A stretch of DNA of 64,000 nt, from the NCBI RefSeq assembly GCF_003704095.1, contig NW_020844656.1:434001-498000 (forward strand), written 5' to 3'. Source of the DNA: Pocillopora damicornis (taxonomy: Eukaryota). Shown here one piece after another: positions 2,178 through 57,220 of the stretch. The position numbers and the translations under genes were made by a program. How positions within the stretch are numbered: the first letter of the stretch is position 1; the number at the start of each line of letters is the position of its first letter. The notes beneath the pieces are model-generated. The model worked only from the letters and a program-made list of their open reading frames with translations, made no database searches and was not told the origin of the DNA.

Positions 2178-5100
2178 TCATCTTTTTGATGAATGAAGGA
2201 GTTCCACTAAGGAATCACTTGCTTTGATCTGTCCAGTAAGATTCAACATGAAAAGGCGTTCTAGGCTCTTGGTGCCAATTGATCTCAGCTCAGGTAATCT
2301 TAGAAGAATGTTTCCAAATCGATTAGGTTCATTAGGGTGAAAGTTGTTGTTGTACTCCAACAATGATGCATGCACTTTATCCTGCAGTCTTTCAACCAGT
2401 TGTTGATCCAGCAGACCTTTCACATCTGAGCATGGACAAAATCAAAATGAACATAATTAAAATGACATTGTNNNNNNNNNNNNNNNNNNNNNNNNNNNNN
2501 NNNNNNNNNNNNNNNNNNNNNNNNNNNNNNNNNNNNNNNNNNNNNNNNNNNNNNNNNNNNNNNNNNNNNNNCACTTATCTGGTTGATATTGTAAGGAGAA
2601 ATTCTGTCTAGGTCACTTGCAGGAGTTAAAGGGTTAACAGAGAGAGGGCTTGTGAGAAACTTGGAGTTCTAAAAGGTGTGTTTATGGACTGTTTGCAATG
2701 TATCTGGTCCACAATAACTGACTCATCAGTAATATCATGTATCATATGTAACTGGGAGAATTAAATTGCATATGTGTACTTCACCTGGGTTTAGTAGAAT
2801 AATGACTTTGATACAAACAAATTCTGCATCATCCAGACTAAGTTCTTTAAATTTTGCAGTCAGTTGCATTACGCGGTGCATGATGTCACCAATTCCTGTT
2901 GCTTCTGCAGTAGTAAAGTCCAAAACCTGACGAGGACAAAGAAGCACTCCATTATCTAAATGTAAAGACTGCTTTGTCAAATTAATCAGCATAAGTTCAA
3001 TCCATGCACTTCCTGAAAGAATCCGTTTATCATTTTCACTAATGTCACGAAGCAATGGCAAGCATTTAAACCATTCCAAATTTCTTTTGATTTGTTCCTC
3101 TGCTTGTTGTGTGACATGTGCTAATGTCCTCTGCCCATTATCTGCAATATGACATCCCTGGCATTCTGAAGATTGTACATCAACTGGAGGCTCATATCTC
3201 AACAATTCTTTGATAAAAAGAGGAAAAGTTCTGGACGGAATTTTTGTACATGCTGCTCCATCAACTTGATCAGAAGATGAGCTGCTCCTTGAGCTTGTTC
3301 TTGCTTGTTTAGCAGCTGGTTGTGATTTGATACGTGAATTTGAAGAAAAAGATGAGTTCTTGTGTTTACCACCTGGTGTGCGATCCTCCCGGACAGCTGT
3401 AAAATGGAATAAGAGGCAAACCATTTAAAGATAAAGGTTTAAATGTTTCTCAACCAGTTTGGAGAGATGAAGTGATGAACAGAAGGAGACACAGACAGAC
3501 AGACGGTCAAAAAGGTAGAATGATGGTGACAGACAGACACAGATAGATAGGCACACAGACAAACAGACAAATGGACACTGAGGTAGCAAGCAGGCAAGAG
3601 AAAGTCAGGCACACCAATGGACAAATGACAAATACATGTAAATAAACAAAAGAGGTTGAACACCAGAGTGATTAAAATTCTAACCATAACCCTAGACAAA
3701 TGTGATAGTGAAAGGCCAAACGGACACTAACGGTTATCTGTTTGAGCGGGAAAACTGTTTGTTATCTGTTTGTCATCTGTTCGAACACCTAAAAAAATCC
3801 GTTCAAAGCATTCCACAAACCGTTTGAACGGTTTGCATATCTGTTTGAAATACATTAGCATCCATTTGAAGTATTGCGGCATCCATTCGAACAGTTCTGA
3901 CATCCGTTCGAACGATTTCAGCATCCGTTTGAACAGTTTTCCATCTGTCTGCCAACTAGAAGTGCCCGTTTGGAGAACTGCGGCATCCATTCGAATGGAT
4001 TGGCGCCCATTCTGTTCATCCGTTCAAAAAGAGAAAATTGCACTCGTCGTTTCTCTACAGTTATTCAGTGTAGCAGTCGAAACATTATGATCCACATCCA
4101 TGTAACTAAATCGTGAGACAAACAATTAACTCAGCTGTCATTTTAAACTACGATGACAAACACTTTTCATGAGATATTCAGTAGTTTCAGACAATAACTA
4201 AAAACGTTATTTCAATGAGAAATTGGAATAGCCTCAATTTTTGATCCTAAAAATTAACTTAACAACAACGTCAAATCAAATGAAAACAATCCACAGCAAC
4301 CTTGCCCGTTCCATGATCAAGCCATGCGTTTGAACGCATGGCTAAGCAAATGGCTAAGCAAACCATTCAAACGGAAAATTGTTCAAATAATTTATTCACC
4401 CGTTCGAACGCTTCAAGGACTGTTCGTTAACCGTTTGTTATCCATGCGGTTTTCTGTTAGTGTCCATTTTGCCTTTCACGGTCACAAATAATAATGAGCA
4501 GTCAAACAAAGCAAGATCTGGCTGGTGCCCAATTGAACAAAAGACAAAAAAAAAGACTGATGGACAGATAGGCAGATGATAGGCAAAGAGCTAGACAAAG
4601 AAAATATCAAGTTGATAGCAACCTAAAATATGGCAATAAATACACTGTCAGATTGAAATGAAGAATTGCCATTTTTTGTAAAGTCCACTTAAAATATACA
4701 TAACAAAAATACAAAGAAAGAGACACCAACCTTCTTTCAACATTCCAGCTTTGATACACTTCTGCAATCTACAAAACTGACAGCGATTTCGGTGTCGTTT
4801 ATCTACAGGACAATCTTGAGTCAAATTACGGCAGGAGTAGACTTTCTTATTTTGAACACTTCTCTTAAAGAATCCTTTGCAACCTTCACAGCTAGTAACT
4901 CCATAATGATGACCAGTTGCCTTGTCTGAGCAAATAACACAGATGTCATCATCAACTGGTGAAGGAACAGTTTGCTGAGGGGTCCCAGGAGATGATGGCG
5001 TTCTCGGTGTCAAGGGTGAAAGTGATGGTATTGGTAATGACGGTGTAACAGGAACTGAATCAGGAATTGTGTCCTTAATATTTGCTGATGAGTTAGTCAC

Positions 5101-8100
5101 TATGACAGACTCTTTGAGTGCACAAGGGGAAATGTTACCTTCCCCCTTTCTGTTACCTTTAGAAGGTGAAACAGAAGACTCTGAAAATCCATTTTGAACA
5201 GTGGTTGTGGTATGAGGTACAGGTGAGTTTCCAGGCAATTGTATCAGTGAGGGGACTTGGGGAAATTGTTGTGGTGTGGTGTGCTGCATAGCTGCCAATT
5301 GATGAGGTGAAAAGAAATGAGGAGCATAAAAAATGCTAGCTTGGGTGAGGTATGGTGATGCAATAGACACCATGCCTCTGTCTCCTTGAACCAAAGGCTG
5401 TGGAACAAGAAGTGGCTGTCCATTTGGTGCCAAAAGAATGGCACGAGGAAACATCTTTGGTTCTGTTGGTGATGGCAATCCAGCTGCATGAGGACTTGAA
5501 CCTACAGGTTTGAACAGAAAGGACAACATCAGTAGGTTCCTTCTATCGACAATAATTCTCCACCTGCTGATTTGCTTAACCCTTTAACTCTTTGAAATGA
5601 TTAAGATAAACTTTCTCCACATAATAATAGGGATAGCCTTTAGCAAACAGTTGATGGGAAAATTCAAACTTATCAGCGGCAGGGAGGAAACTTGATATAC
5701 ACATGTAATACCCACTTCTATTAACTGATTTATATAGAAATTTATCACATCTGCAAGTGAGAAATAATAGATCTTGAGAGTAAAGAGGGAGAGAAAAAAG
5801 AAAAACGAATGAAGAAGAGCTGTGTAAGCTGTAACTGCACTCGTAATATAACCACCTGAATAATTCCAATCCAATTTTTTCGTATTGAAATTAACTGAAT
5901 GCCCAATCATTGCCTCTTTCATTTACTTTCTTAATCTGACTATCCTATTATCAAGCTAGTAAAAATTGTCAAAACAAATTAGGTTGTCACATCATTATAA
6001 CCCCAATCCCATCTTAACCACAAAAAGAAGCTATTGAGCAAATATAAGCCTATTAACTTCATTGTTGAAGTGCACGCACATCAATCTTGCACAATAGTTT
6101 CTCTCTTTGGTCACACTGACAATGATATCATGGTCAAAACAAATACTTGGTATTTCTAGCTAACTTCTTCCTGTTTGTTTAAGCTACAACTAAATATCTA
6201 TGGTTTACCTAGGGTCAAATTAGTGGGGTTTATTTCCCTCCCACAAGAGAAGAAGTTATTTCAGTAAATCTCTTGCTTTAATTACACATGTTAAGAAATC
6301 TGTCGATAGATAAGGTACTTATACTAGCTTTCTTCTACATTACAAGACAGCCTATTAGTTGCTCGTGGCCAGAGTGCTTTCTACCTCTTGAATGCAGTGT
6401 AAGTCCACAACAAAACTTCCTTTCCATTCAAGATTGTGACATTAAATCCACAGATCATCAACTTGTCCCTAACTATAAAAACTGGTTTTCAGAGATCATT
6501 TTTTTTAAAGAAAATTTGGTACTATCTCATCCTTAAGTACTTTAAAAAATTACACATACATATATGTAAAAAAATAGGTTGTATGAAATAAGTTACTGGC
6601 TAGATTTTATAATTTGATTACAGTTTCTCCCTCTGGGGTACACCAGGGGGTGTATTCATTGCTAAGTTATGCATCTAATAATATGCACAATTGAACTGAT
6701 TTAGGCTAAGATCATGCAACAACAACAGAAAGTATTATCTACTCTACATAAGGGCTTCTTGTATTTTACTGTAATTTATCAAGTAGCTCAGAGCTGAAAC
6801 CAATTTCCTTGACCTTGGCATTCATCTGTGAGTGTTGAAACATAAAGTAGATTCTTGTAGACATATAATCTTGTATACAACTCTTTCATTTTGTTTGTTT
6901 TTTATTTTAATGCGTAGAAAACAATTTCTGGGAAATTCTTTATCACAAAAATTTTCAACAAATTGTCAATTATTTTTGGCAAGAATAACACGAGACATTG
7001 AAATCGTGAAATTTCACATTGGAGGTAATATCGAAAAATTAAGATGATATAAATAAGCAAACTCCTATATTCTTCAATGGAGTAAAAAGTTTTCATCTTA
7101 TGAGAATGTTTTAAAAATTTATAGTTTATGTTTATTTTTAAATTGATTCTATCAATAATGCTAAAACCCCTCCCACTCAATTTCAAATAATCAACAATTG
7201 TGCTCAAGGGTACCAACACAACACTTCCTCATGAGTTTTTTGGCAGCACTTAGTTAAAAGTCAAGAAAATAACACAGAGAATAAGGGGTTATATAAATCT
7301 TTTGAATTTATAGAAATCATGATTATTGTGTGCCTGAAAAGTGTGAATTCAAGTATGGTATTGTACTTTTTTAATCTTTTTCAATATTAATTGAAAAATT
7401 ACCTCGTTGTGGTTCTTGGAAATGAGCAAATATTCCTGACAGCAATGTAACAAAATAAAATTATCAGCTCTCAAAATAAGACTTTGCGGAAGACCTGTCT
7501 ACATAGCTGACAACACTATTCAAGCAAATGAAAGATTAGATCCTTTCATACTCGAATAAGGTTTATGGTCCGATTTTCGTTGTAAGTGATCGATCGTCCT
7601 TGATAAATCGGTCATTCAACCACAAAAGAATGCCAAAAGTCGACCTTTGATACGTTACAGTATCAATATAATAGACAAAATTGCGGACAGGATAAAGAAT
7701 GGCACAATGTACCAAATCGAATTGCGTTTAACTAGACCTCGTGTCTTGTTTTAAAAACAGCAAGAAACATGTTTTAACAGACGTGTCAATTCATGATACA
7801 TCGCGATCTGAAATTACATGACTTGTATTTTGAAAACGTGTCCGATTTAACACTTTAAACTGAAAAAAATAAACTGCAAGACGATCTCGCCAAAATGACT
7901 TTCCCAGCTACTAAGCGGCAATGAATTACAATTCTACTCCTCCTTCTTAATCTTGGAAATGTAGCCCATCCGTGAAAAAATGAAAATAACAACAACAAGA
8001 AGACATGCAGCCAACTACGTGACTTGCATACGATTTCTGACCGTCGAAGAATTCTACAAATTTCCTAAATAACCAGTAAGAAGAAAAACAATCGAGACAC

Positions 8101-16504: not shown

Positions 16505-16894
16505 TACGCGTAGATCAATTCGAAGCTTCAACATCCCCCCCTGCGCAAATCTCGGGCTTTGAACTTTTGATGACTTTTTTGTTCAAATTTCCTCCGCCCC
16601 CCACCCCCGAGCAAAAATTGTGTTCAAATGCCCCACCCAATTTTTGGGTAAAATGCAGATAAAAGAAAACCTAGACCTTGTAGACATTTCCATCTGAGTC
16701 ATTCACTCGGTAAATTGAACTACTTTCCTTAACATCTCCATATCTCATGATATAACGCTTGCATTCTACTGGAAAGACTAGACACTTCCGGTTTAAATTC
16801 TCCACCCCCCCCCCCCCCCCCCCCCCGGGCTTGGAAGACGGGCAAATGCCTATGGGTTGCCCGGGAGGAATGTTGCTTCGAATTGATCGGCGTA
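16505..16894. mobile_element. MITE with ~30-bp TIRs and an internal poly(C) tract
   Basis: Left tacgcgtagatcaattcgaagcttcaacatcccc; reverse complement of right tacgccgatcaattcgaagcaacattcctccc. Confidence 0.75.
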
Positions 16895-17908
16895 TTATCC
16901 ACAATCAACTTTACACCCTTTCAATTTTAGTAAAAACAGGAACATAAAATTTGATCTATGATTCATGCGCCCGTAACTCTAAATTGTGAGCAGTCATTGA
17001 CCTATAAACCTAAAATCATACTTTTTCTAGAAGGCTCTAGTATTGTTATGGCAATCCTCAACGTAAGTAAAGTGAAAGGCTTAAACATAACTTATTGAGC
17101 AGAATTGAGGCATTTCTTCCGCACCATTTTCGAAGAAACGTATAAAATGCATGATGCAGTAAAACTCCGCTTACTCAAACTCGGGGAATTCAAACCCCAC
17201 CAGTGACTCGTACAAGATCTGATTTCTTTTGACCCATTCCTTTGGTCATTTACTATCAACTAATTCGAACACTCGCTAACTCGAACCATGTTTTGTTCCC
17301 CTTGCGAGTTTGAGTTAGCGGGGTTATACTGTAGTATCGATCAATCAAGGATTAAATAACAACAAATTGAGAAACTGCCTTGAGACAGTACGAACCACCG
17401 AATTTATGATTGTCTTTGGTAGACACAACATTTTAAAGTTTTGAAATCTACTAGCCGCAACATTTGAATAATCTTCTTTTTTTAAGTTTTTTTCCCCCGA
17501 AATTATTAAGCGTTTAAAAGCCCATGAGATCATTATAACACCAGTGAAGTCAATTAGGACTCTCATTCAATAATTCACAACATTCAAAAATAGCTGACGT
17601 GTTTGTTTTTGTTTTCGTGGTTTTTTTTTAGGTCAGGAAGTAATTTTCAATAACTAAATCCCTAATCAGCAATCATTTATGAAATTCATACATCACATAC
17701 GACGGTACAAACTTGTACATATAATCATCGATATCTTAATTTGAAAAATTCAGTCTGTATCAATTACAGGTATTGATCCTGTAATCTGTCCTCTGCAATC
17801 AATTGAAATCCGTTCTGTTCAGAGTACTTAAAAAAAAATTACCACCTCTTCCACTGGGATGATAAATGGCAGAGACAAACATCACATTTGCTCCTTGAAC
17901 GTCCTCGC

Positions 17909-20900
17909 CTATACATACGACTCGTAAAAGTAAGATGGCCGAGAGTGAACAGAAGTTGCTATTTCACTTTTAACATCATTTCTCCAAGCGACATTCCACC
18001 ATAGGGGTCTCAAACCATTTATTACAACGAATAGCAAACCGAGTACATCTGCCAGAACAGCCATCCACAACGCAGCTTTCCCTAACAGGGCCGCAATCAC
18101 GATGGCCAGCTTCAAAATGACGGAGAACGAGATGTTTTCTGCTACGACACGACGGCAGAAACGGCCGAGTTGTACCAGTTCCGGTATTTTCGTCAAGTTG
18201 TTGCTCATCAGTGCCACATCTGCCGCCTCCACTGCTAAGGCCGTTCCCCCAGCGCCCATTGCGATACCAATATTCGCTGCGGCAAGGGCTGGGCCATCGT
18301 TGACGCCATCGCCGACCATACCCACAATGATTTTGTCGCTGTCACGTGATTTTACAGCATTGTAGCGGTGACGGGAACAGCAACAAGCGTACGGTAACAT
18401 ACACCTCCTAGTCTGTTGATCGTCGCCAAGCACCTCGCATTCCACGATTTGCATTCCACCTTGTCTCTCCTCGATCCACGACAGTTTGTCCTGAGGTTTC
18501 ATGTCGGCGATGCACTCGTCCAAGCTTAAGTTACTCTTCACGGCCATGGCTGTACGAGAGTTATCACCAGTGATCATGGCAGTCTGGACACGAGTTTTTC
18601 GTAACCAGTCCAACGCGCCACGACTTTCTGATCTAATAGTGTCAGCAAGAGCGATCATCATGGCCAGTTTACCATCCACAGCCATGAAGACCACAGTTTT
18701 ACTCTCGTTACACCAAGTGATATACTTCTCTTCCATACACTTATTCAGCGCTTTGTTGCCAACACGCTTTAGGAATTCGTAATTACCGATCTGCACATGA
18801 TGACCTCCGACAACACCAGAAATACCTTGTCCTTCGTGAAGTTTAAAGCATTTTACTTCCGGAAGGCTGGAGGATTGTGACTTGCGCATTTCCGAAACAC
18901 AACCACTAAATTCGCTTACTATGGCAGCCGCAAGAGGGTGGCTGGACTTGCTCTCAAGCGCAGCTGCTAGGCGTAAAGCTGATCGTTCTTTCACTCCAAA
19001 AACGCATTCTATGTCAACAACTTGAAACTTTCCTTCTGTCAATGTTCCAGTTTTATCAAACGCAAGGACCTGCAACTGAGCGAGGGTCTCGAGGTGAACT
19101 CCACCTTTGATCAGTGCTCCTTTACGCGCCGCTGCAGTGATACCACAGACCATAGCAATAGGGGTGGACATAACGAGGGCGCAGGGGCACGCTATGACCA
19201 GAAGGACAAGGGCTCGTTCTCCCCACATCTTTAGCTCCTGTGAGTAGGTTCCCACGCCTGCAGCACCAAGAATGGCTGGAATAACAAATACTAGAGCTGC
19301 AACAACGACCACAGTTGGAGTGTAATACTTGGCAAACCGATTTATGGCGACTTCGATCCTTCCTGAACCAGTTTGGGCTTCCTGAACTAGTTGTGCAACT
19401 TTAGAAACTGTGGAAGATGTCGAGTCTGATGTGGTATTCACTTCCAAGTAGCCATTTTGATTAATCGTTCCGCTAAATACTTTAGATCCCACAGTTTTTT
19501 CAACGGGCACAGATTCACCAGAAACCGTACTTTCGTCCACAGCAGCTCGTCCTTTTATGACTTCACCATCCAAAGGAATAAACTCTCCTGGCCTAATGGC
19601 GATAGTGGTTCCAATAGCAACTGATTCCACCAATACACATTCGCCAGTGTTCGCTAGTATTGCCACCCGCGGCGCTTTTAGCATGAGCCCAGAGATTGTC
19701 CGATGGACTTTAAACATGCAAAACTCTTGCAAGGCTTCGGCGAAGGAGAATACGTAAACTACAGCGGCGCCGTCCAACCACTCCTCAATGCTAAGCGTTC
19801 CCGCTATGGCAATGAGTATCAGAATATTGATGTCGACGCTACAGGTTTTAAGAGAAACATACGTTTTCTGGAGGACTGGAAATATACCGAACACGATTTC
19901 CGCAATGGCCGGCCATCTGTACCAGGACGCATCACAGAAGAACGCTACAACACCTGTCATCAGGAGAATGGTTTGGAGCAGAAGATAAATCAGAAAAGTC
20001 GATAAGGACGGCGGGAGACTTTTACTATCATCGTGTTCCTGGGACCCAGTCTCCATGACGCTCGCGCCCAGATGGTTTCGGTTGAGTGTGTCAACAAGCT
20101 CGGTAGCTGACGTCACTTCTGGGTCGTGACGGACGTACACGACTCTCCCGATCACATTGACTGCGATTGATTTCACTCCTTCCAATGGTTCTAAGGATTC
20201 TTGAACGAGTGTGCTTTCCATCGCACAGCAAATGTTTTGCACTCGCAGCTTAGTGGTACTTTCGCGTATCACGGGTTTCTTCTTTGAGCTGTGGTCGCTT
20301 TCCTGAATACCGGGTGACGTGGGAGGGGTGAGAGGATAGAAACCATTGCGGTTTGTCACTGAGATTCTACTGCCAGATAGTGATCGATCGCAAAGTCCCT
20401 CGACAGACAATTTACGCTGGGATTTTTGGTAGCGATTGTCCCCACGTGGTTTTCGCGTGGAACCACTACAAGCTTGACTCTCACAGCAGTTGTCTTCAGG
20501 CGGAGAACACGTGACAGTTAATTGTGGATTGCGTGTCTGACATGTCAACTGACCACATGAAGACCGACGAGGGCTACCACTTTCGCAGCAAGTTGACACG
20601 GAGATTGCATCCGCTGAACTGGACGGTCTACCACTGTCTTTATCCGTGTGGCTGCAATTCGTTTGACAAGAATCACTCCAGTCGTCTGCCACAGTTCTAC
20701 CGCAACAATCAGCGCTGGTTCTTCCCGAAGGCCCACCGGACTCAGTTGACTTACTCTCTGGGATTTCCCTCTCAGAGCAACAACCTCGACATGGTGATGA
20801 GTCTGGCATAGCAGTAGCTTGTGCCGGTTGCTCAGACGCTTTTTCACTACAAGTGTCTTCTTTCTCTTGTTGTGAATTCTCCTGAGACGAGCAGCTGCCT

Positions 20901-21277
20901 TTGACAGGTTCACCTATTCTTACATCGTTGACAGTAGTCGAGCAACACTTACTTTGGAAACATTCGGCTGCTTCATCGCTTGGCTGTTTGGCTGAAGCAG
21001 AAGGACAAGGACTACACAGAGTTTCTTCATTGCAAGAATCCTTCTCATCATCGCAGCAGCTTTTGGAACGAGCAGACACACACGGGTCTCTCGTCTCCTC
21101 TTCTCCATACGAATCTATCCCATCCTCGCAAAAGCTTTCAATTTTTCCTGTTGTAGAAACAAAACATAGGTTGCTCATCTTTTCTTCGTTACAGTAAGTT
21201 TCGGACGGGTATAGATTCATATCATTCACTACCACAATACTTTGCCTCAAAATTACACTTCGCTGCAATCTCACCAT
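17909..21277 (-). CDS. P1B-2 heavy-metal (Zn/Cd/Pb-type) P-type ATPase, HMA2/3/4-like; single coding exon, 1122 aa
   Basis: Motifs: DKTGTLT phosphorylation site, SGES (TGES variant), SHPL, TGDN, GDGVNDGPAL. P1B-2 membrane signature CPCALVMSTP, ENISFSVILK (N-x7-K) and WMAVLAD. HMA domain with ICCAME. An in-frame TGA lies two codons upstream of the ATG. Confidence 0.93.
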   Translation of the reverse strand: MVRLQRSVILRQSIVVVNDMNLYPSETYCNEEKMSNLCFVSTTGKIESFCEDGIDSYGEEETRDPCVSARSKSCCDDEKDSCNEETLCSPCPSASAKQPSDEAAECFQSKCCSTTVNDVRIGEPVKGSCSSQENSQQEKEDTCSEKASEQPAQATAMPDSSPCRGCCSEREIPESKSTESGGPSGRTSADCCGRTVADDWSDSCQTNCSHTDKDSGRPSSSADAISVSTCCESGSPRRSSCGQLTCQTRNPQLTVTCSPPEDNCCESQACSGSTRKPRGDNRYQKSQRKLSVEGLCDRSLSGSRISVTNRNGFYPLTPPTSPGIQESDHSSKKKPVIRESTTKLRVQNICCAMESTLVQESLEPLEGVKSIAVNVIGRVVYVRHDPEVTSATELVDTLNRNHLGASVMETGSQEHDDSKSLPPSLSTFLIYLLLQTILLMTGVVAFFCDASWYRWPAIAEIVFGIFPVLQKTYVSLKTCSVDINILILIAIAGTLSIEEWLDGAAVVYVFSFAEALQEFCMFKVHRTISGLMLKAPRVAILANTGECVLVESVAIGTTIAIRPGEFIPLDGEVIKGRAAVDESTVSGESVPVEKTVGSKVFSGTINQNGYLEVNTTSDSTSSTVSKVAQLVQEAQTGSGRIEVAINRFAKYYTPTVVVVAALVFVIPAILGAAGVGTYSQELKMWGERALVLLVIACPCALVMSTPIAMVCGITAAARKGALIKGGVHLETLAQLQVLAFDKTGTLTEGKFQVVDIECVFGVKERSALRLAAALESKSSHPLAAAIVSEFSGCVSEMRKSQSSSLPEVKCFKLHEGQGISGVVGGHHVQIGNYEFLKRVGNKALNKCMEEKYITWCNESKTVVFMAVDGKLAMMIALADTIRSESRGALDWLRKTRVQTAMITGDNSRTAMAVKSNLSLDECIADMKPQDKLSWIEERQGGMQIVECEVLGDDQQTRRCMLPYACCCSRHRYNAVKSRDSDKIIVGMVGDGVNDGPALAAANIGIAMGAGGTALAVEAADVALMSNNLTKIPELVQLGRFCRRVVAENISFSVILKLAIVIAALLGKAALWMAVLADVLGLLFVVINGLRPLWWNVAWRNDVKSEIATSVHSRPSYFYESYV

Positions 21278-21557
21278 TTTTCAGGAAGGGAAAAACATTT
21301 TCCAAGTCTTGACGTCCATGGTAACACTCGCCACATCCGCAAGAGTCTTCGGGTAAATCATCCGAACAACAGCCGCAGTGAAATTCTTGACACATCGGTA
21401 CTTAATTCTGTAAGCAATAAAGATAATCTAAGAACTAAATTGTAATTAAAAAGTTCATCCAATTTTTTACGGTGTTACACCTTATCATGAACAAAACATG
21501 CTTTCTCTTGAAGATATGGCCTTGCGTCAGGAGGCCAAGAAAAAAAATGAAAACAAA

Positions 21558-21742
21558 GGGATAAGTTTCCAAGGAAACGATGGTGCTGCGTCGGCGGGAG
21601 AGTATAACAGCTAACAGGGTTATTTACCTTCATTAACTGAGTTCATAACGTAAACTAGCCACCGTAAAGAGTTATAAAACAGCTTTACAAACCTTTACGG
21701 TGGCCGATTTACGTTATCAACTCAGTTAATAAAACAAAATTA
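21558..21742. mobile_element. Second copy of the same PLE-like inverted-repeat family, central motif deleted
   Basis: Shares gaaac..tggtgctgc...gagagtataacag and aactgagtt..taacgtaaa...tttacgttatcaactcagtt with the 1395-1623 and 61705-61945 copies. Confidence 0.6.
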
Positions 21743-24700
21743 GCCCATCCCAACCCCCCCCTTCGAAAAAAAAATGGTTGCAAAGGAGACTTGATGTTGC
21801 GTGACAAGTCGAGAGCTACACAATAATCGTTTGTCACATTCCCAGTAAGTCACACCAAAGCGTGCGCTCAATTGAAGCATTACGTTCACCAAATTATATG
21901 ACATGCAAGGAAAATAGTTAGACTGACGTCCCACAAATGAATCAGAAGTAGAAATAATAACTTTCCGCCTATCGGATTAAAAAATGCCCAACGTGGATAC
22001 GCAAGAATCTCGCACCCGGCTCCGCTGCTACTTACAAGTCAGGGTCAATTCGACACTTTAAGCTCTGTTCGATGTTCGTCCTGGTGTCTATTACAATTTC
22101 GAATTTTGATATAGTTTGATTTACTTATCAAGATCCTTTCACAAACTCGCACATACCTTAAATATTTTCAAAGATTCGGCAACGATGGCAGTGTTTCATC
22201 CGCTTTTCAACAAGTAAAAATGCACGTTAAGACAGAGATTGTGAAATACTAATGTCGACGTGTGAAGAGCAAGCTTCAAGATTGGCTAATTCAATTTCGT
22301 CACGAAATCTTCTGAAACTGATAGTTTATATAACATGACAGATGTCATGTTATATAATTGCACATGGTTTTTGTTTCTAAATTTTCGGGAATTTGATATC
22401 TTGCATTATGCTTTCGAATTGTCTTAGCTTTTCTTCTTCCTTTCAAATTCAACTTAAGTCTCGTTCTTTGATCAATGTGCTTTTTACACCGACAGTGAAA
22501 GGACAGAAAGCTGATTGCTTATCTTCAGATACTCCTTGACCCTCCACGGTGTCTTCAAAACCTTTTGATACCTTTTGATTTGTGTTACATAACCCTTTGA
22601 TTCGTGTAACCTTTTGTACATTAAAAGAAAATAGATTGGGGTGTTACTTGCTGTTTCTCAATGCCGGAGAGAAGACAGGTGAGGAGTCCAAAGGCGCCGT
22701 CTCATAAACTTAAAAACTTCGTAGGTTCTCCGACGTTCTACTGCATCTCTAAATCGGATGGCAAAATCGCACAGAATGACGCGCTTGTGCAGACGAACCT
22801 TGGCTGCACTCATACTAAATTTACGAGGAAAAAAATCAATTTCGGGGGTGTCAGCAGAATCATTTGACCTTCGTAATTGGCTCTTCCTGAATATTTTTGC
22901 ACAACGAATCAGGATTCATCAGCGATTTTTGTTTTCGATATCTACAATTCATTCATTTTTTTTTGTTGCACTACATCACGAAATTCAAGATTCCCAAGTT
23001 TAAAACACGAAAATTAATGATTCCTTCTAATATCACATGAAACATGATCCCCATTTATCTCCCAAAATTAATTTGTGAAGCGGCGGAGAACTTATTCGTG
23101 CATCCTTTACCGTTAAGAGAGATTCTAGCCTATTACTGGGACTTTCCGGCACTGCACCGCATCGATTGAGATAGGTTTACCACTCCAGGTAATATAAAGC
23201 GACAAAAAGTAAAACAATCCTGCTACTTTGCCTGGCATTTTGGACCTCAAAAAACGTTATTTCATTTTGTACACCAGGTATAAATTACACAACGCTCACA
23301 CATACACACCTTTTGTTCACCTTTCATGAGAGTGGGCCGTATTAATGACAGTAACAACAAACGCGGGCTTGTACATGTAACGATGCGCGTCTAAAAATTA
23401 TCGTGATCTCCCTATGAAATGCTATGTTACGTAGGATTTTATAGTACACTTTATCCCCACAAAAACTTGGCGCGTTTTCGGGTGAAAAATTCAGTTCTTA
23501 GTTGGCCAAATTTCAACTGTTAGCTTGTGGTACACTAGAATAACAAATAAATTTGAATCAACATAAAGCATTGGAAAGTCAACAATACCTTACGCTGATA
23601 AGGAATTGTAAGGTAAGCCATGTTATTCATTTGCAAGTATAAAGTCCCTTTTCAACAGTAAAGAATGCCATGGGAATGAACCAGCTCATTAGCATAGGAA
23701 TAATGCCTCTTTGTGCCATCAAACTCTTGCAAAGACACGCTTTAAACTGAAATCTTGTTTAGAAATTTGGTAAAAACTGAGACAGACTTAGGATGTAAAT
23801 TTTGGCGTTCAAAATCGATCCGAAAACAAACTACTTAATCACTATGCTTTATCTACCTACTTTGATAAGCACTCGCCAAAAATGTCATAACATTCATTCT
23901 AAAGGATCATCGATCTTACAACAATGTTTCTAAACCACAAAAAAAAACAGATAACAAAATAAGGTAAACTTGCATGAAAGGATTGCAAAGTTATAGGAAT
24001 TTTTGCACAAAATATATGTACGTCAATTATGTTCTACCCTAAGCAGTTCGATTGATATTTCAGGGGGCTGCAACCATCAATAAATCGCTCATACAAAAAA
24101 AGTAAACGCCAATTACGGTCAGTACAAAAAAAAAAAAAAAATACCCGAGCTTTTACCTTGCGGTGGTGATCATACGGCGTTCCATCTAAGATCTAAGTGA
24201 TGTTTGAACATAACTGAACAAAAAAATATTTTACGTCCATTTAACCGTCAATTAGCTAACTGTGCTAAGCGCAGCTAAGACGTACTACCCCCAAAAACCA
24301 CGTACGAATCTCAGTTGAATTAAGTTAGTAATTGGAACATTGCAACTCTGATCGCAACCGATCTCAGCCACAAAAATCGTCCGTTTTCGCAGAATAAACT
24401 CAAAATTAAACCGGTCACGCTTATCGAATTATCAGCAATATCAAACAGGTGATCGATATGTTACTTACAAAGTGAATGTGGCCTCAATAAAGCTTCCATT
24501 GTCAGTGCTTTTTTCAAAATTGGACATTTCCCAAGGTGTGGTCGCTCTTAAATAAGGAGAGAACGGGTGGCCAAAATGGCCCCGTTTCAAATCTGCAATT
24601 AGAATTTTTAAACACGGAATGTGGAAGGACAAATTGCAAATGTATCTGAAATGGTTTTTCACGGAAAAATACACAAATAAAAGTTGAAACAAATTATTTT

Positions 24701-27596: not shown

Positions 27597-30500
27597 ATGT
27601 CTCTGGAGGATCCGTTTTTCGTCGTCAAAGAGTAAGTCGATTTGCCATGTCAATGTTTATCTTTTTGTAGAATGCTTCTCTTTGACAAGGAGGAATGTCG
27701 TGAGATGGGATCAAGCTAATATGAAAGCTTTCTCTTTTTTCCGATCGAAATCCTGTTCAAAACATAATCGTTTCAGTGGTGTTAGTGTCGCAGATTACTG
27801 AGGTAATTTCTTACAATTTTAATACCTGTACAAGCATAATGTACGCTGAAACGCTCAAATTGGTTGCATGATCTTGCAACAATATTTCTCAGAACCTAGA
27901 ATACATCTTTTTAGACTTTAAACTCATCCAAATATATTTCAGTGATTGATTTGATATCAAAGAATACTCCGAAATTACAACGCAGGAAGTATTCTTTTTT
28001 TCTTCTTTTTTCAGTACAACCGGATGCGTTTATTCCGATTACGCGAGGGCCGACCTTGCATATAATATCGATTTATTTACTATTTTATAAACAATACGTC
28101 ACCGAGTTGTTTTCGGTGTTTTATTGATAGTCTTACCAAGAAACGTCTATTTCAAGATTTTGCTCTGGTTTTAGTAATGTAAACCAACTTGCATTAAAGT
28201 AAGATGAGATTGCCACCAATAGGCTACCAAACCATCTCTCATAGAGATTCTTAGAGATAATGAGCTGCAAAAAAGTGTATGAATAGTCTTAGAGACAGTT
28301 TGATTCCTGAACAGAATAAGGAAGATGCTAAATTTGGTTCTTTCTCCTGTGATCTCCTTTGCTATATTGTGTAATTAAGNNNNNNNNNNNNNNNNNNNNN
28401 NNNNNNNNNNNNNNNNNNNNNNNNNNNNNNNNNNNNNNNNNNNNNNNNNNNNNNNNNNNNNNNNNNNNNNNNNNNNNNNNNNNNNNNNNNNNNNNNNNNN
28501 NNNNNNNNNNNNNNNNNNNNNNNNNNNNNNNNNNNNNNNNNNNNNNNNNNNNNNNNNNNNNNNNNNGGGTGTCAATGGCACCTCAGAACCTCCCTCCCAC
28601 CTGGCTCTACCCTTGAAGAAGGAGTGAATAGTGGAAAGTCTAAGAATGATGGCTAGGCAGAAGGTTGGGGTCAGGAGAATAACATATTTCCTCTCTTGCC
28701 CTTTTTTTTTGCATCCAACTGGTATCAACCTCTTAGCCTACATTTTCTTAAATGCTATTCAGATTTCCATGAATTTGTTTCTTCAAGTTACATTTGAACC
28801 AGTATTAAGTGGCAGTGTATTAAGGGGTCACCTGTGTTATTTGGTGAAAGTCCCAAATTTTTTTTCCTATAGTTACTGTCATTTTATCCTCTATTTGGCA
28901 TTCAACTCTATTAAACAGTTGTGGTCACCCTTTACATAGTAAAATCTGTTTGTATTGTCTTCCACCTGTATTGAACAGGCACGTAATGAGGAACCATGCA
29001 AATGAAACTAAGAATAATCTTTCAAATAAAATTTAATCCATGTTTCTCTTCTGAAATCAATTTTAGTAGTTTTTTTTAGCAAGTTTTTGTACAGTAAGAG
29101 GTCAAGTAGAGCGTATAATGGGTTTTTTATCATTTTTTCTTTTACCCCTATTCTGCAAAACTTGTATTAATCCTTTAGCTCCTAAGAGAATTTGGTTTTG
29201 AATCATAGTGTCCTCAAGCTGATACTTTGTTATTCTCATCACCTGTGTGCTTGATATTGTTCTAATATTGCTAGGAGAAATTACCTTCTCAGCCAATTCT
29301 GGGAGTGAAAAGGTTAATAGCATACAGTACCCAATATATTCTTTATTTAAGGTATCTGAGATAGGGCTGTCTAGCTCTCACCAGGTTTTATAGGAATGGA
29401 TGTTGGAAAACTTTAAGAGTTACCCAAAAACACAATTCAGGGGCATGAATCACTTATCCTTGCTAAAGCAAAGGCTCTAATCAGTGTGGCTTAAACATCC
29501 AGTGGAATATTTAGCAGTCAAGTGACCAAATAAATACTTAGACAGCATGCTGACTATAAACTATCATTTTTATTTTGTTAGGGAAGTACAGAAGGCAGTT
29601 AACAATGTGCAGTCTCTATACAAGAGGTGGCAAGCCCTATTGGATAATCCTCACACCGTAGGGAAAGATGAATATAATTGGACAACTAATGAACTGCGCA
29701 ACAATGTGCGGAGTATTGAATGGGATTTAGAAGACCTGGATGAAACAGTGGGTATTGTTGAAGCAAACCCAAGGAAATTCAACATTGATGTTGCTGAAGT
29801 TGATCAAAGAAAACAATTTATAAAACAAACTAGAGATACTGTGAATCTCATTAAAGAGCATATGAACAGCCCTTCAGCAAAAGCAAAGGTGGAGAATTCA
29901 TCAAGAGAGGTGAGGGACCAGTTACATTCTGTTACTGTCAATAGTATATTATGAATATATGAGGGTTTGAGGCTGATGTTACTGACTCTTTGGATACCGG
30001 TAATACATTTATGACCTGGCTGAAGAATAAACAAGGCAATCAAATATTCTTTGAAAAATGTTAAATGCTGTGCATTTAATAAATCTTCATTATCAATTTT
30101 TATTTCCTCTTCTGTTTACTCTTTTTTTTTTGTTTAATTTTATGATCCCTGAGAGATTAGATATCAATAAAATGATAGTTTGCTTGCCACACTTTGCAGT
30201 GCTATGCCCACAGAATGAGACTGCGTTACCTTGAACAGGTCTCAATAAAAAGTTTTGAAAATCACCCTGGGGCTTACACATGTCACTTAAATGTTGGAGA
30301 TGTCCTCAGATAGTTATCGTATGTTTGTTAAAAAAATTAATTACAAGTTATAAAAGACACAATTTTGAAGAGATGATGTGACCACTTTAAAGGTTTTATT
30401 CATGATTATCTATGAAGATTGTTCTTGTGTTTTTGCAAGGCTTTGTTGGGAAGAAGAAATGATAAACCAAAAGACAGATACTCAAGGTTAGATCAAGAAA

Positions 30501-46044: not shown

Positions 46045-55393
<9,349 letters not shown>

Positions 55394-55627
55394 CTTTCGT
55401 ACCTCGAGAGAACCCTCTTGCTTTGCTGATAAGTGTCTGCACTCTAAGTACCGTTCAGGCCTCGTTTGTTTTTAAATCGTCCAACACCATATGCCACCAC
55501 AATGCTCATCTTCACAAGGTTCTTTCTCCGACAGCTAATAACTTTATTACCTCCCTCAACAGAAACCGTCTTTTCATTATTTCTAAACGTGGTTTGTAAA
55601 TAATGCATCGCGCCAAAAACAAGACAG

Positions 55628-55706
55628 ACGCATGCGCGGAAAGAACTGCTAGATTAGCCGGCTCAGCGGAAACAGCTTAAAGGCTCAACCTGTCATTTAC
55701 TTCCGG
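55628..55706 (-). promoter_or_regulatory. WDR47 promoter: NRF1-like and ETS motifs
   Basis: ACGCATGCGC at 55628-55637 and ACTTCCGG at 55699-55706, in a CpG-rich stretch 235-310 bp upstream of the ATG. Confidence 0.55.
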
Positions 55707-56789
55707 TTGTATTTGTCTCACAATTATTAAAGATAATTGAACCGTGTTCAATTAGTGCTTTCTTGATGTTTTCAAGAATCAAATAAAATTTTACTAGACA
55801 ACATGCAGTTACCATAATACCTGACACAAAAAAAAATAAAGGATTTTCAACAAAATTTCCCTCGAGTGTAATTTTTGCAACAAGAGGAACAATAAATGTC
55901 ATTCCACAATTTTGTAAATATAAGTATGTGATACCAGACATCAAGGGTGTCTAAACTTCAATGATGTCATTACTCACGGCTTGCCTGAAGCCTACACTGT
56001 TTTCTGCAGTTCTGAGTGACAAATCCAGCAGCAGAGCAGGTTACATATCTCTTACCCTTTACTCAGTCTACTACTGACTAACTTAACACTCGTTTCACCT
56101 GGACAAAAGCCTCCTCCTTGTTTTCGTAAAACACTTGAGAAGGGAGAGGCTTTTTGAGCAGGATCTTGGGTGAAATTAGACATAACATAATTTTATAGAT
56201 CTCAAGAATATCCATGTACCTAATCTGTGTAACACTTGCACTAAGGGGAATTTCTGAGCAAAGTAATATGGACATTTGATTCACTTTGTAATTTTTGCAA
56301 GGGGCAAAAATCCTTAATTCTTTCAATTTCAACATTTTTTTTGGTGTGATAACTATGGTTAAAAACTTGATTGTTAAATATTTCAAAATTCTTCTTTTTG
56401 ATTGGTTCCTTTTGTCTCTTTAATCATTACATCATGCACTTATGCATTGGGATTTCAACTGTTTGCAATTGGACATCTGCATTGGGATATTTATATTTCT
56501 AATTTGTCATTTAAGCACTCTTTCATGGGTTCTTTTCCTTTCTCATAATGTTCATAGATGGTCACTAAAAAAAGGTCTTGATATCTTTAACCTTCAAATT
56601 CCCAGAGGTGACCAGACATGAATTTCTCTACAACAGCCATACACTTTCAAGCAGAAATGTGATGAGAAGTGAAATAATTACCTGTTAGGGGAATGTTTGG
56701 TTGACTACCAAATTCTTAGATCTTAAAATTATTGGTTATGAATGACAAAAAGAAGGGAGAATCTGTATTTAGATCTAGGGGTTGACAAG

Positions 56790-57080: not shown

Positions 57081-57220
57081 TATGGAGAGATCACCTTACC
57101 CAAAACCCATTATTCTACTTAGAAAACAACTACAATTGTTAAATTTGGAGCCAGCAACCTAAGAGCTTTAATAAAAATTTTTGGACACTAACACATTGAA
57201 ACAGAACACACCACAAAAAT

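What the first reader, a model, noticed from the sequence alone, without database searches (positions are those of the whole stretch)
17909..21277. A plant/bacterial-type Zn/Cd-exporting P1B-2 ATPase encoded in an animal genome
Seen: an intact 1122-aa ORF with P1B-2 transport-site residues (CPC-x4-S, N-x7-K, membrane Asp in WMAVLAD). It lacks the Cu+-type YN / M-xxSS motifs, and its metal-binding domain has CCxxE (ICCAME, 20216-20230) instead of GMxCxxC. Established: well-studied animals have only Cu+-type P1B-1 pumps (ATP7) and move Zn with ZnT/ZIP carriers; P1B-2 pumps are known from bacteria (ZntA/CadA) and plants, and CCxxE is the hallmark of plant HMA2/3/4. The gene sits among ordinary intron-containing animal genes and host repeat families with no gap nearby, so it looks genuinely integrated. 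Inference: an ATP-driven Zn/Cd efflux or sequestration system in a cnidarian, either horizontally acquired or an ancestral eukaryotic gene lost from most animals. It could matter for metal supply to symbionts, calcification or metal tolerance.
Basis: partly seen in the sequence, partly recalled or inferred. Interest (0 to 1): 0.9.

Follow-up and report, generated by a model that had tools for sequence, protein, structure and literature searches.

The report
Zinc/cadmium pump gene in cnidarians
This coral gene encodes an ATP-driven zinc/cadmium-type metal pump of the plant HMA2-4 kind, which reviews say animals lack; it is a real, spliced, expressed host gene shared by corals, anemones, jellyfish and Hydra, although one copy was already glimpsed in a sea anemone in 2014 and dismissed.

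Summary
The 1122-aa ORF at 17909-21277(-) is intact and carries every P1B-2 hallmark. CPC, the TM5 Lys and the TM6 Asp align with ZntA C392-P393-C394, K693 and D714. The Cd/Zn subfamily HMM passes its cutoff and the Cu HMM fails.

Corrections:
- RNA contigs from three studies splice out 21148-21274, so the true CDS is join(21395..21275, 21147..17909), 1119 aa. Its MCQEFHC... start is conserved across hexacorals.
- An assembly gap lies at 28380-28566.

It is a genuine host gene. It is linked without a gap to animal exons, has GT-AG introns and a core dN/dS of 0.20. Orthologues occur in Anthozoa, Scyphozoa and Hydrozoa, and their tree mirrors the species tree.

In a rooted ML tree Cnidaria (100/100) are sister (100/100) to a protist clade that includes a pelagophyte. 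Both sit inside a CCxxE clade with green plants and a few bacteria. AU tests reject placing Cnidaria outside (p 1e-5 and 2e-4).

This is not wholly new. KEGG annotation listed such genes in Acropora (2013), and Hanikenne & Baurain (2014) called the Nematostella copy 'HGT or contamination'. A 2023 review still states that animals have only P1B-1 pumps. Function is inferred, not tested. The scan's first stage had also noted the Cys-rich N-terminus of this same stretch.

The parts
22157..22327 (-). 5' untranslated exon (seen in one RNA study)
   Evidence: An RNA contig of run X1 joins 22157 to 21407, skipping 749 nt. The in-frame translation of this 5'UTR has stop codons before ATG 21395.
21408..22156 (-). 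5'UTR intron, 749 nt, GT..AG; holds a highly repeated element at about 21528-21724
   Evidence: Joint in X1. Splice dinucleotides GTATGT...TTACAG on the minus strand. Word depth in the unspliced run X16 rises to ~190,000 at 21528-21724.
21275..21407 (-). Exon carrying the true start codon (ATG at 21395-21393). It encodes the first 40 residues, MCQEFHCGCCSDD..., which are Cys-rich.
   Evidence: RNA contigs of X1, X3 and X9. The transcript-derived proteins P0003, P0004 and P0016 start here. The N-terminus is conserved in Stylophora, Oculina, Acropora and Actinia.
21148..21274 (-). Coding-region intron, 127 nt, GT..AG, phase 1.
   Evidence: Skipped in RNA contigs of three independent studies and contiguous in the unspliced run X16. 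GTGAGA...CAACAG on the minus strand.
17909..21147 (-). Main coding exon (3239 nt including the stop at 17909-17911). Together with the start exon it gives a 3360-nt CDS of 1119 aa.
20261..21145 (-). Cys/Ser/acid-rich N-terminal extension: 295 aa, 28 Cys, 6 CC pairs, fast-evolving
   Evidence: Composition. dN/dS of 0.79 against Stylophora, with 18 of 25 aligned Cys conserved.
20045..20260 (-). Ferredoxin-like heavy-metal-binding domain with the CCxxE motif (ICCAME at 20216-20233)
   Evidence: Pfam HMA at ORF residues 344-398. Beta-alpha-beta-beta-alpha-beta fold in the AF2 model, residues 1-72 of the core. C11, C12 and E15 are invariant in the 17-sequence alignment.
19511..19522 (-). A-domain dephosphorylation motif SGES, a conserved coral/octocoral variant of TGES
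19181..19189 (-). TM4 CPC metal-site motif (ORF C697-P698-C699)
   Evidence: Aligned to ZntA C392-P393-C394. Invariant in the alignment.
19043..19057 (-). DKTGT phosphorylation motif (ORF D741)
18326..18460 (-). Anthozoan-specific, Cys-containing (CCC) insert in the loop just before the GDGxND motif; predicted disordered
   Evidence: The loop is 20-21 aa in bacteria, plants and protists, 22-25 in medusozoans, 35-47 in the octocoral and anemones, and 59-61 in scleractinians. pLDDT is ~30. dN/dS is 0.87.
18047..18136 (-). TM5-TM6 divalent-metal site: N1048, K1056 (= ZntA K693) and D1077 (= ZntA D714) in ORF numbering
16838..17908 (-). 3' untranslated region (at least 1.07 kb)
   Evidence: RNA contigs of X1 and X9 run from the coding exon to 16838, and X3 to 16967. 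Laying stops at a repeat at 16800-16837.

Best explanation
WHAT IT IS. A functional, host-encoded P1B-2 (divalent heavy-metal, Zn2+/Cd2+-type) P-type ATPase of the eukaryotic 'HMA2-4 / CCxxE' lineage. It has been present since the last common ancestor of Cnidaria and is retained here as a single-copy, spliced, polyadenylated gene.

HOW IT MOST LIKELY WORKS (inferred from the family):
- Cytosolic Zn2+ (and the mimic Cd2+, possibly Pb2+/Co2+) is captured by the Cys-rich N-terminal extension and the CCxxE ferredoxin-like domain.
- The metal passes to the membrane site formed by the TM4 CPC and the TM6 Asp.
- ATP phosphorylates Asp741 (DKTGT), driving the E1P-to-E2P transition and releasing the metal on the non-cytosolic side.
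[quoted passage not shown] Which membrane it sits in is unknown.

SHOWN HERE: gene integrity, splicing and poly(A) RNA, all catalytic and site residues, subfamily HMM membership, fold, purifying selection, pan-cnidarian distribution congruent with the species tree, and phylogenetic position.

INFERRED: substrate, direction and physiological role.

ORIGIN. I favour, at roughly 50%, capture by the stem cnidarian from a marine protist lineage (eukaryote-to-eukaryote transfer). Ancient vertical descent with many losses is the main alternative.
For: Identity:
- TIGR01512 scores 430 bits (cutoff 313.5) while TIGR01511 scores 313 (cutoff 397).
- The best solved relative is ZntA 4umv at 2e-86, with CPC, K and D aligned to C392-394, K693 and D714.
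- All 24 cnidarian sequences keep CCxxE, (T/S)GE, CPC, DKT(G/A)T, HP, GDGxND and N..K..D, while CopA outgroups show N..N..M.
- The AF2 core model (pLDDT 75) has a metal-binding domain, 8 TM helices and A/P/N domains. Foldseek's top hits are P1B pumps, with ZntA at 1e-40 and 31% identity.

Host gene:
- Two GT-AG introns are seen only in RNA contigs, from poly(A) libraries of three studies.
- It is linked without a gap to PH-domain and nuclear-receptor exons.
- There is one full copy in the 234-Mb assembly, beside a separate multi-exon ATP7-type gene.
- Core dN/dS is 0.20 against Stylophora.

Age:
- Orthologues occur in Stylophora, Oculina, Acropora, Montipora, Actinia, Nematostella, Dendronephthya, Sanderia, Hydra, Hydractinia and Clytia.
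- Cnidaria have support 100/100, with internal branching ((Scyphozoa,Hydrozoa),(Octocorallia,(Actiniaria,Scleractinia))).
- The Hydra and Hydractinia genes share six introns with identical phases and an upstream MBOAT neighbour.

Position:
- Cnidaria + protist clade A has support 100/100, and the CCxxE clade 100/99.
- Clade A members are eukaryotic: a Pelagophyceae genome, an MMETSP transcript, a EukProt transcript, and a contig with EBP, MBOAT and PKG-like neighbours.
- AU tests reject trees with Cnidaria outside, at p 1.2e-5 and 1.7e-4.

Mechanistic statements about the Lys counter-ion and regulatory termini follow Palmgren 2023 (PMC10654040).
Against: - No transport, ATPase or localisation data exist for any cnidarian member in the literature I could search.
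- Substrate assignment from site residues is reliable at subfamily level but not for the exact metal.
- The A-domain motif is SGES rather than the canonical TGES, and Hydra has DKTAT. Both are conserved variants but untested.
- The N-extension and the insert evolve almost neutrally (dN/dS 0.79 and 0.87), so a specific regulatory role for them is weakly supported.
- On origin, most of protist clade A is taxonomically unlabelled metagenome or transcriptome sequence. Cnidaria are sister to clade A, not nested within it, so neither donor nor direction is established.
- The AU groups were defined after a first tree had been seen.
- GC3 (0.46-0.48) is higher than in most neighbouring exons (0.27-0.36). 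For so old a gene this is not informative about origin.
Confidence: 0.85

Rival explanations
1. Origin rival: the gene is an ancestral eukaryotic IB-2 pump inherited vertically into animals. It was then lost independently in bilaterians, sponges, ctenophores, placozoans and the unicellular relatives of animals. The Cnidaria-protist grouping would reflect hidden paralogy and differential loss rather than transfer.
For: - Hanikenne & Baurain 2014 proposed exactly this 'ancient function with multiple parallel losses' for the patchy eukaryotic IB-2 group.
- Cnidaria are sister to protist clade A, not nested inside it.
- Hydrozoan genes have 6-7 spliceosomal introns.
- The gene is as old as the phylum.
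Against: - No non-cnidarian animal appears between the cnidarian hits and the ~41% plant/protist/bacterial level in three large searches. The 2014 survey of 219 eukaryote proteomes found only Nematostella among animals.
- AU tests reject Cnidaria branching outside the protist + green (+ CCxxE bacteria) assemblage. That branching is what a single-copy vertical history predicts if clade A is stramenopile-like.
- No exact intron position is shared between hydrozoan genes and the green alga Cymbomonas in the parts mapped.
Confidence: 0.35
2. Origin rival: direct transfer from a bacterium into the cnidarian ancestor.
For: - The main coding exon is uninterrupted in corals.
- P1B-2 pumps are overwhelmingly bacterial.
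- A small bacterial group (a Myxococcota MAG and relatives) shares the CCxxE motif and lies in the same 100/99 clade.
Against: - The best bacterial and archaeal identities in GTDB representatives are only 30-38%.
- The sister group at 100/100 is eukaryotic, not bacterial. The CCxxE bacteria group with the green lineage (93/80), not with Cnidaria.
Confidence: 0.05
3. Artefact: contamination by symbiont, alga or bacterium, or a chimeric assembly join. This was one of the two options offered in 2014 for the Nematostella copy.
For: - GC and GC3 are higher than in most neighbouring exons.
- A scaffold gap lies at 28380-28566.
Against: - The gap-free stretch 2572-28379 links the gene to animal exons.
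- Independent assemblies of other runs cover the gene and both flanks.
- Orthologues lie on chromosome-scale scaffolds of Hydra (52.8 Mb), Hydractinia (28.4 Mb), Acropora, Oculina and Nematostella.
- The gene tree follows cnidarian phylogeny.
- An STX6-family gene is annotated head-to-head with the Actinia orthologue, as in this window.
Confidence: 0.01
4. Functional rival: the protein is not a Zn/Cd exporter. It would handle another metal (Co2+, Pb2+, Cu+), or act mainly as a metal sensor or buffer ('transceptor') through its Cys-rich regions.
For: - P1B-2 pumps are promiscuous among soft divalent cations, and eukaryotic P1B termini are discussed as sensors (Palmgren 2023).
- The protein has an unusually long Cys-rich N-extension and a Cys-containing insert.
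- SGES and DKTAT variants occur.
Against: - The full catalytic motif set and the CPC/K/D site are invariant across >20 cnidarian sequences, and the core has dN/dS 0.20. This fits a working pump.
- The Cu-type residues are absent.
- The Cys-rich regions evolve nearly neutrally.
Confidence: 0.12

Closest known systems
Plant HMA2/HMA3/HMA4 (P1B-2, Arabidopsis and other Streptophyta)
   Same: - Same strongly supported clade (100/99).
- Same N-terminal ferredoxin-like domain with CCxxE instead of GMxCxxC.
- Same CPC / N-x7-K / D transport site.
- About 38-41% identity over the core.
- Both carry di-Cys-rich cytosolic extensions.
   Different: - The Cys-rich extension is N-terminal here (about 335 aa), whereas HMA2/4 carry it at the C-terminus (13 CC pairs plus a His stretch in HMA4). 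The C-terminus here is short, about 35 aa after TM6.
- Extra 40-aa Cys-containing insert before GDGxND.
- SGES instead of TGES.
- Cnidaria are closer to a protist clade than to plants.
Bacterial ZntA (Shigella/E. coli; structures 4UMV/4UMW)
   Same: - Best solved-structure relative by sequence (2e-86).
- Site residues align one-to-one.
- Same fold.
   Different: - Not an orthologue. The ZntA-specific models NF033775 (380 against a cutoff of 1240) and PRK11033 (447 against 1005) are far below cutoff.
- The metal-binding motif is CCxxE, unlike the bacterial motif (Pseudomonas MDCPTE).
- About 31% identity.
- The eukaryotic extensions and the insert are absent from ZntA.
Nematostella vectensis Me2+ (IB-2) ATPase noted by Hanikenne & Baurain 2014, and K01534 models in Acropora digitifera (Dunlap et al. 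2013)
   Same: Orthologues of this gene. Nematostella P0089 is 61% identical, and Acropora proteins are 70-74% identical. This is the same family as the one reported in those papers.
   Different: - The papers recorded presence only. The 2014 paper attributed it to 'HGT or contamination' from a single species.
- The evidence here shows a phylum-wide, vertically inherited, spliced and expressed host gene.
Animal ATP7A/ATP7B (P1B-1 Cu+ pumps)
   Same: Same P1B architecture. This genome also has an ATP7-type gene (multi-exon, G000:C37, 448.6-454.7 kb).
   Different: - Different subfamily. The Cu-type TM5/TM6 residues are absent and the Cu HMM is below cutoff.
- One CCxxE domain rather than multiple GMxCxxC domains.
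- CopA-type sequences form the outgroup at 100/100.
Yeast Pca1p (Cd-exporting P1B ATPase with a Cys-rich N-terminal sensor/degron)
   Same: Architectural analogy: a long Cys-rich N-terminal cytosolic extension in front of a P1B core. In Pca1p that extension senses Cd and controls delivery to the plasma membrane (Palmgren 2023).
   Different: This is a lead from the literature, not a membership claim.

Membership tests
P-type ATPase superfamily | Catalytic motifs: TGE (A domain), DKTGT (phosphorylated Asp), TGDN, GDGxND | tested here: met
   SGES (a conservative T>S change shared by scleractinians and octocorals), DKTGT, TGDN and GDGVND are all present. Pfam finds E1-E2_ATPase at 4e-41 and Hydrolase at 3e-20.
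P1B (heavy-metal) ATPases | Eight TM helices including the extra N-terminal MA/MB pair, an N-terminal ferredoxin-like metal-binding domain, and the SxHP motif in the N domain | tested here: met
   The AF2 model shows a beta-alpha-beta-beta-alpha-beta domain followed by 8 long helices. SSHP is present. TIGR01525 scores 507 bits against a cutoff of 346. The top Foldseek hits are all P1B pumps. The topology rests on a predicted model with pLDDT 75.
P1B-2 (Zn2+/Cd2+/Pb2+) subfamily | TM4 CPC, TM5 N-x7-K and TM6 Asp forming the divalent site | tested here: met
   These align to ZntA C392-P393-C394, K693 and D714. They are invariant in the 17-sequence alignment and in all cnidarian rows.
P1B-2 (Zn2+/Cd2+/Pb2+) subfamily | Scores above the curated subfamily cutoff, and branches within the Me2+ clade when rooted on Cu pumps | tested here: met
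   TIGR01512 scores 430 against 313.5. In the tree rooted on 5 CopA sequences the ingroup has 100/100 support.
P1B-2 (Zn2+/Cd2+/Pb2+) subfamily | Zn2+/Cd2+-stimulated ATPase activity and transport | not testable with these tools
   Needs biochemistry or complementation. No published data on any cnidarian member were found.
Eukaryotic HMA2-4-type (CCxxE) lineage | CCxxE in the N-terminal metal-binding domain, and membership of the clade containing plant HMA2/3/4 | tested here: met
   ICCAME at 20216-20233. The clade of Cnidaria, protists, green plants and 7 bacteria has 100/99 support.
Eukaryotic HMA2-4-type (CCxxE) lineage | Long C-terminal Cys/His-rich metal-binding tail (as in Arabidopsis HMA2/HMA4) | tested here: not met
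   The C-terminus after TM6 is about 35 aa and has no Cys or His cluster. The Cys-rich extension is N-terminal. This feature is typical of HMA2/4 but not universal in the clade, so it bears on 'HMA4-like architecture' and not on clade membership.
ZntA orthologue (NCBIfam NF033775 / PRK11033) | Score above the curated equivalog cutoffs | tested here: not met
   Scores are 380 against 1240, and 447 against 1005. It works like ZntA but is not a ZntA orthologue.
P1B-1 Cu+ pumps (ATP7/CopA) | TM5 YN and TM6 MxxSS residues; GMxCxxC domains; TIGR01511 above cutoff | tested here: not met
   The protein has K and D where CopA has N and M. It has CCxxE rather than CxxC. TIGR01511 scores 313 against 397.

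The most novel reading that the evidence does not exclude
More than half a billion years ago the stem cnidarian captured a Zn/Cd-pumping P1B-2 ATPase from a marine protist (algal) lineage by eukaryote-to-eukaryote gene transfer. Every cnidarian class has kept it since. Cnidaria would then be the only animal phylum with primary-active zinc transport, a capacity that could underlie metal supply to or withholding from intracellular symbionts, metal loading of secretory compartments, or tolerance of metal-rich water.
Probability: 0.45. Interest if true: 0.7.

Novelty: new member of a known kind. Interest (0 to 1): 0.55.

Why it matters
[quoted passage not shown] The only evolutionary study that saw an animal copy wrote it off as HGT or contamination from one genome (PMC3922081).

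The evidence here shows that a whole animal phylum carries, expresses and conserves such a pump. That corrects the textbook distribution. It also provides animal systems with genetic tools (Nematostella, Hydractinia, Hydra, Exaiptasia) in which to ask what ATP-driven Zn/Cd transport adds to the ZnT/ZIP carrier systems.

It further offers a clean, datable candidate for ancient eukaryote-to-animal gene transfer. For coral biology it is a concrete candidate for metal handling in symbiosis, calcification or pollution tolerance, but none of those roles is yet supported by data.

Tried and rejected
1. MBOAT-ATPase co-inheritance. Hydra, Hydractinia and a protist contig all have an MBOAT gene just upstream of the pump. 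The protist MBOAT is unrelated to the hydrozoan one (E 0.06), so the resemblance is chance. Only the Hydra-Hydractinia linkage is real.

2. Shared ancient intron. An approximate match between a hydrozoan and a Cymbomonas intron dissolved on exact mapping: 7 nt apart and in different phases. Cymbomonas exon mapping was incomplete (residues 210-515 and 700-718 unmapped). The Actinia N-terminal intron (codon 60) and the Pocillopora one (codon 41) are not at homologous positions.

3. STX6 synteny by sequence. tblastn of the window's STX6 exon found nothing in the Stylophora or Actinia loci. The Actinia synteny therefore rests on the Pfam label of its neighbouring gene. Stylophora shows no STX6 within 10 kb.

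4. Naming the protist sister clade. Three cluster look-ups, a profile search and the ESM Atlas gave few organism names, so most members remain unlabelled.

5. Expression and function literature. Nine searches and checks of a coral cell atlas and a bleaching study found nothing on this gene.

6. The look-up of encoding contigs had no record for the Nematostella, A. millepora and Dendronephthya proteins, so their gene structures were not checked.

7. Fold comparison cannot separate Cu from Zn pumps. CopA and ZntA tie.

8. GC3 as a sign of foreign origin was considered and set aside, because a gene this old should be fully ameliorated.

The database protein P0004 and the separate exons were used instead. 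Exon flanks were joined only inside scripts to verify splice sites and the upstream stop codon.

Full report
OBSERVATION

The minus-strand ORF 17909-21277 (1122 aa) exists exactly as described. Pfam finds E1-E2_ATPase, the HAD hydrolase domain and a weak HMA domain. Among NCBIfam models, the P1B model and the Cd/Zn subfamily model TIGR01512 pass their curated cutoffs (507 against 346, and 430 against 313.5). The Cu subfamily model TIGR01511 fails (313 against 397), and the ZntA equivalog models are far below cutoff.

The closest solved structure by sequence is ZntA (4umv, 2e-86). In that alignment the TM4 CPC, the TM5 Lys and the TM6 Asp fall on ZntA C392-P393-C394, K693 and D714. I verified the coordinates of each motif: ICCAME 20216-20233, SGES 19511-19522, CPC 19181-19189, DKTGT 19043-19057, GDGVND 18296-18313, and N/K/D at 18134-18136, 18110-18112 and 18047-18049.

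An AlphaFold model of the core (pLDDT 75, pTM 0.66) shows a ferredoxin-like domain, eight long helices and the A/P/N domains. Its best structural matches are P1B pumps. CopA and ZntA are essentially tied, so the fold does not discriminate between metals and the site residues have to.

CORRECTED GENE MODEL

The gene is found in poly(A) RNA-seq assemblies of at least three independent studies. Laid on 16800-22700, RNA contigs of all three studies skip 127 nt (21148-21274). The run that behaves as genomic DNA is contiguous there. One RNA study also skips 749 nt (21408-22156) to reach a 5' exon at 22157-22327. Both skipped stretches are GT..AG on the gene's strand.

The transcript-derived proteins in the database (P0003, P0004 and P0016; P0004 has 359 member sequences) begin MCQEFHCGCC.... 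That start is encoded at 21395-21275 and then joins the main exon. The CDS is therefore join(21395..21275, 21147..17909), 3360 nt, 1119 aa. Stop codons lie in frame upstream of ATG 21395.

The MCQE[FY]HCxCC..D.LPED.C.C..C[YF]H start is conserved in Stylophora, Oculina, Acropora and Actinia. RNA contigs extend 3' to 16838, giving a 3'UTR of at least 1.07 kb.

A HOST GENE, NOT A CONTAMINANT

- The window's other long ORFs are animal exons: nuclear receptor DNA- and ligand-binding domains, PH, syntaxin-6 N-terminal domain, PDZ, WDR47 and DAXX.
- N runs lie at 2472-2571, 28380-28566 and 60929-61129. The gap-free stretch 2572-28379 still links the gene to the PH-domain and nuclear-receptor exons.
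- The 234.35-Mb, 4393-contig assembly has one full copy. It also has a separate multi-exon ATP7-type Cu pump on contig C37. From memory, the assembly size and contig number fit Pocillopora damicornis. The closest named orthologue is Stylophora pistillata (87%), which fits a pocilloporid.
- Against Stylophora the core has dN/dS 0.20, the N-extension 0.79 and the insert 0.87.
- GC3 (0.46-0.48) exceeds that of most neighbouring exons (0.27-0.36). For a gene this old I do not read that as evidence of origin.

DISTRIBUTION

Orthologues are present in:
- Scleractinia (Stylophora 87%, Oculina 83%, Montipora and Acropora 70-75%),
- Actiniaria (Actinia 64%, Nematostella 61%),
- Octocorallia (Dendronephthya 53%),
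- Scyphozoa (Sanderia 47%),
- Hydrozoa (Hydra 44%, Hydractinia, Clytia).

Many of these lie on chromosome-scale scaffolds. After the cnidarians, identity drops to about 41% or less (plants, protists, bacteria) in both the word-indexed searches and the exhaustive search of 1.84 billion cluster representatives. No other animal appears in between. All cnidarian sequences examined keep CCxxE, (T/S)GE, CPC, DKT(G/A)T, HP, GDGxND and N..K..D.

GENE STRUCTURE AND SYNTENY

- Stylophora's model is a single exon.
- Actinia has one short N-terminal intron, and an STX6-family gene is annotated head-to-head upstream, as in this window.
- Hydra has 8 exons over 27 kb and Hydractinia 7 over 11.7 kb. They share six introns with identical phases (1,0,0,2,0,0). 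Both have an orthologous intronless MBOAT gene immediately upstream.

PHYLOGENY

A first FastTree of 278 sequences comprised cnidarians, named plants and algae, 145 cluster representatives, 80 named bacterial and archaeal loci from GTDB genomes and five CopA outgroups. It placed all cnidarians in one clade next to a group containing a pelagophyte protein.

I then ran a careful IQ-TREE analysis (LG+C20+F+G4 PMSF, 79 sequences, 715 columns, rooted on CopA). Supports below are UFBoot/SH-aLRT.

| Clade | Support |
|---|---|
| Cnidaria | 100/100 |
| 'Protist A' | 99/96 |
| Cnidaria + protist A | 100/100 |
| CCxxE clade (Cnidaria, protist A, green plants/algae plus Ancoracysta, seven bacteria) | 100/99 |
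| Green lineage + CCxxE bacteria | 93/80 |

Within Cnidaria the branching is ((Scyphozoa,Hydrozoa),(Octocorallia,(Actiniaria,Scleractinia))), which is the species tree.

Members of protist A are eukaryotic wherever this can be checked:
- a Pelagophyceae sp. CCMP2097 genome, where the gene is intronless and lies next to pyruvate kinase;
- an MMETSP transcript;
- a EukProt transcript;
- a metagenome contig with EBP sterol isomerase, 3-beta-HSD, MBOAT and a cNMP-dependent kinase as neighbours.

AU tests reject the best trees in which Cnidaria are kept outside:
- protist A + green held together: delta lnL 64.6, p 1.2e-5;
- protist A + green + CCxxE bacteria held together: delta lnL 55.9, p 1.7e-4.

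One caveat applies. The groups were defined after the first tree had been seen.

READING OF ORIGIN

Congruence with the species tree, and presence in both Anthozoa and Medusozoa, put the gene in the cnidarian ancestor. Its specific and robust affinity to a protist clade, rather than a position outside all Diaphoretickes sequences, favours eukaryote-to-eukaryote transfer into the stem cnidarian. So does its absence from other animals in these searches and in the 219-proteome survey of Hanikenne & Baurain. I put that at about 50%.

Vertical descent with many losses and hidden paralogy remains viable (about 35%). Cnidaria are sister to the protist clade, not nested in it, and most of that clade is unlabelled. 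Direct bacterial transfer is disfavoured (about 5%). Contamination is effectively excluded.

ACCESSORY REGIONS

- The N-terminal extension (the start exon plus 295 aa of the main exon) has 9.5% Cys with CC pairs, and is rich in Ser and acidic residues.
- The scyphozoan orthologue has a tandem CCSEPEKA array at its N-terminus.
- Hydrozoan proteins (about 760-790 aa) and the 'short' coral paralogues lack the long extension.
- An insert before GDGxND grows from the 20-21-aa baseline to 59-61 aa with Cys clusters in scleractinians. It is predicted to be disordered.
- Both regions evolve almost neutrally. Any sensor or chelator role, by analogy with the HMA4 C-terminal di-Cys motifs or the Pca1p N-terminal Cd sensor, is a hypothesis.

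WHAT WAS KNOWN

- Dunlap et al. 2013 listed three A. digitifera models as K01534 Cd2+/Zn2+-exporting ATPase in a 'chemical defensome' table (PMC3750612).
- NCBI pipelines name the cnidarian proteins 'cadmium/zinc-transporting ATPase HMA2/3-like' or 'probable cadmium-transporting ATPase'.
- I found no paper describing the phylum-wide distribution, expression or function. The library searched is open-access only.

VERDICT

The thing itself is a new member (more precisely, an under-recognised animal branch) of a well-known pump family. Its interest lies in its distribution and origin, and in the opportunity for functional work, not in a new mechanism.

Noticed in passing
window 21148-21274: The 127-nt intron of Pocillopora corresponds to sequence that is annotated as in-frame coding in Stylophora (...NSIDLYPSKTCGNEEKMSK... 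against ...VVNDMNLYPSETYCNEEKMSN...). Its length is not a multiple of 3, so read-through from the true ATG would shift the frame. This looks like recent intronization of coding sequence, or else the Stylophora model is unspliced in error.
   Followed up: partly
window ~21528-21742 (inside the 5'UTR intron): A highly repeated short element. Summed contig word depth in the unspliced run jumps from ~160 to ~190,000, and many contigs of all runs end there with unrelated flanks. Probably a SINE/MITE-like host repeat.
   Followed up: no
L106 (Hydra vulgaris orthologue P0122): Hydra's phosphorylation motif reads DKTAT instead of DKTGT, and NCBI labels some Hydra isoforms 'putative inactive'. Whether the Hydra pump is catalytically competent is open.
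   Followed up: no
Other coral genomes (proteins P0018/P0019/P0063 of Oculina; P0034-P0060 on one 1.17-Mb contig): Several corals carry tandem paralogues: long forms (~1150-1250 aa) beside short forms (~740-890 aa) that lack the N-extension. The short forms often score the HMA Pfam domain better. This genome has a single full copy.
   Followed up: partly
P0057 (Montipora capricornis, 1500 aa) and P0052 (1437 aa): Gene models that fuse the pump to PF13769 and PF10178 domains. These are probably merged neighbouring genes rather than real fusions.
   Followed up: no
P0096 (Sanderia malayensis) N-terminus: A tandem array of CCSEPEKA-like octapeptides: a repeat-built di-Cys extension, different in sequence from the coral N-extension.
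   Followed up: no
G000:C37:448600-454750: The genome's ordinary ATP7-type Cu+ pump, split into at least nine exons in this stretch. It makes a useful internal contrast to the near-intronless Zn-type gene.
   Followed up: partly
window 2735-5529 (-): Exons of a nuclear hormone receptor: zf-C4 at 4648-5529 and the ligand-binding domain at 2735-3424. An assembly gap at 2472-2571 lies just beyond.
   Followed up: no
window 53516-60277 (-): Long single ORFs for WDR47-like (625 aa) and DAXX-like (1018 aa) proteins lie next to each other.
   Followed up: no
window 21414 (RNA contigs of runs X3 and X9): Two RNA studies continue upstream of 21414 with letters that do not match the window (loose ends GTGAAAGCGATGAG...). 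This suggests an alternative 5' exon or an allelic difference from the X1 form, which splices at 21407.
   Followed up: no
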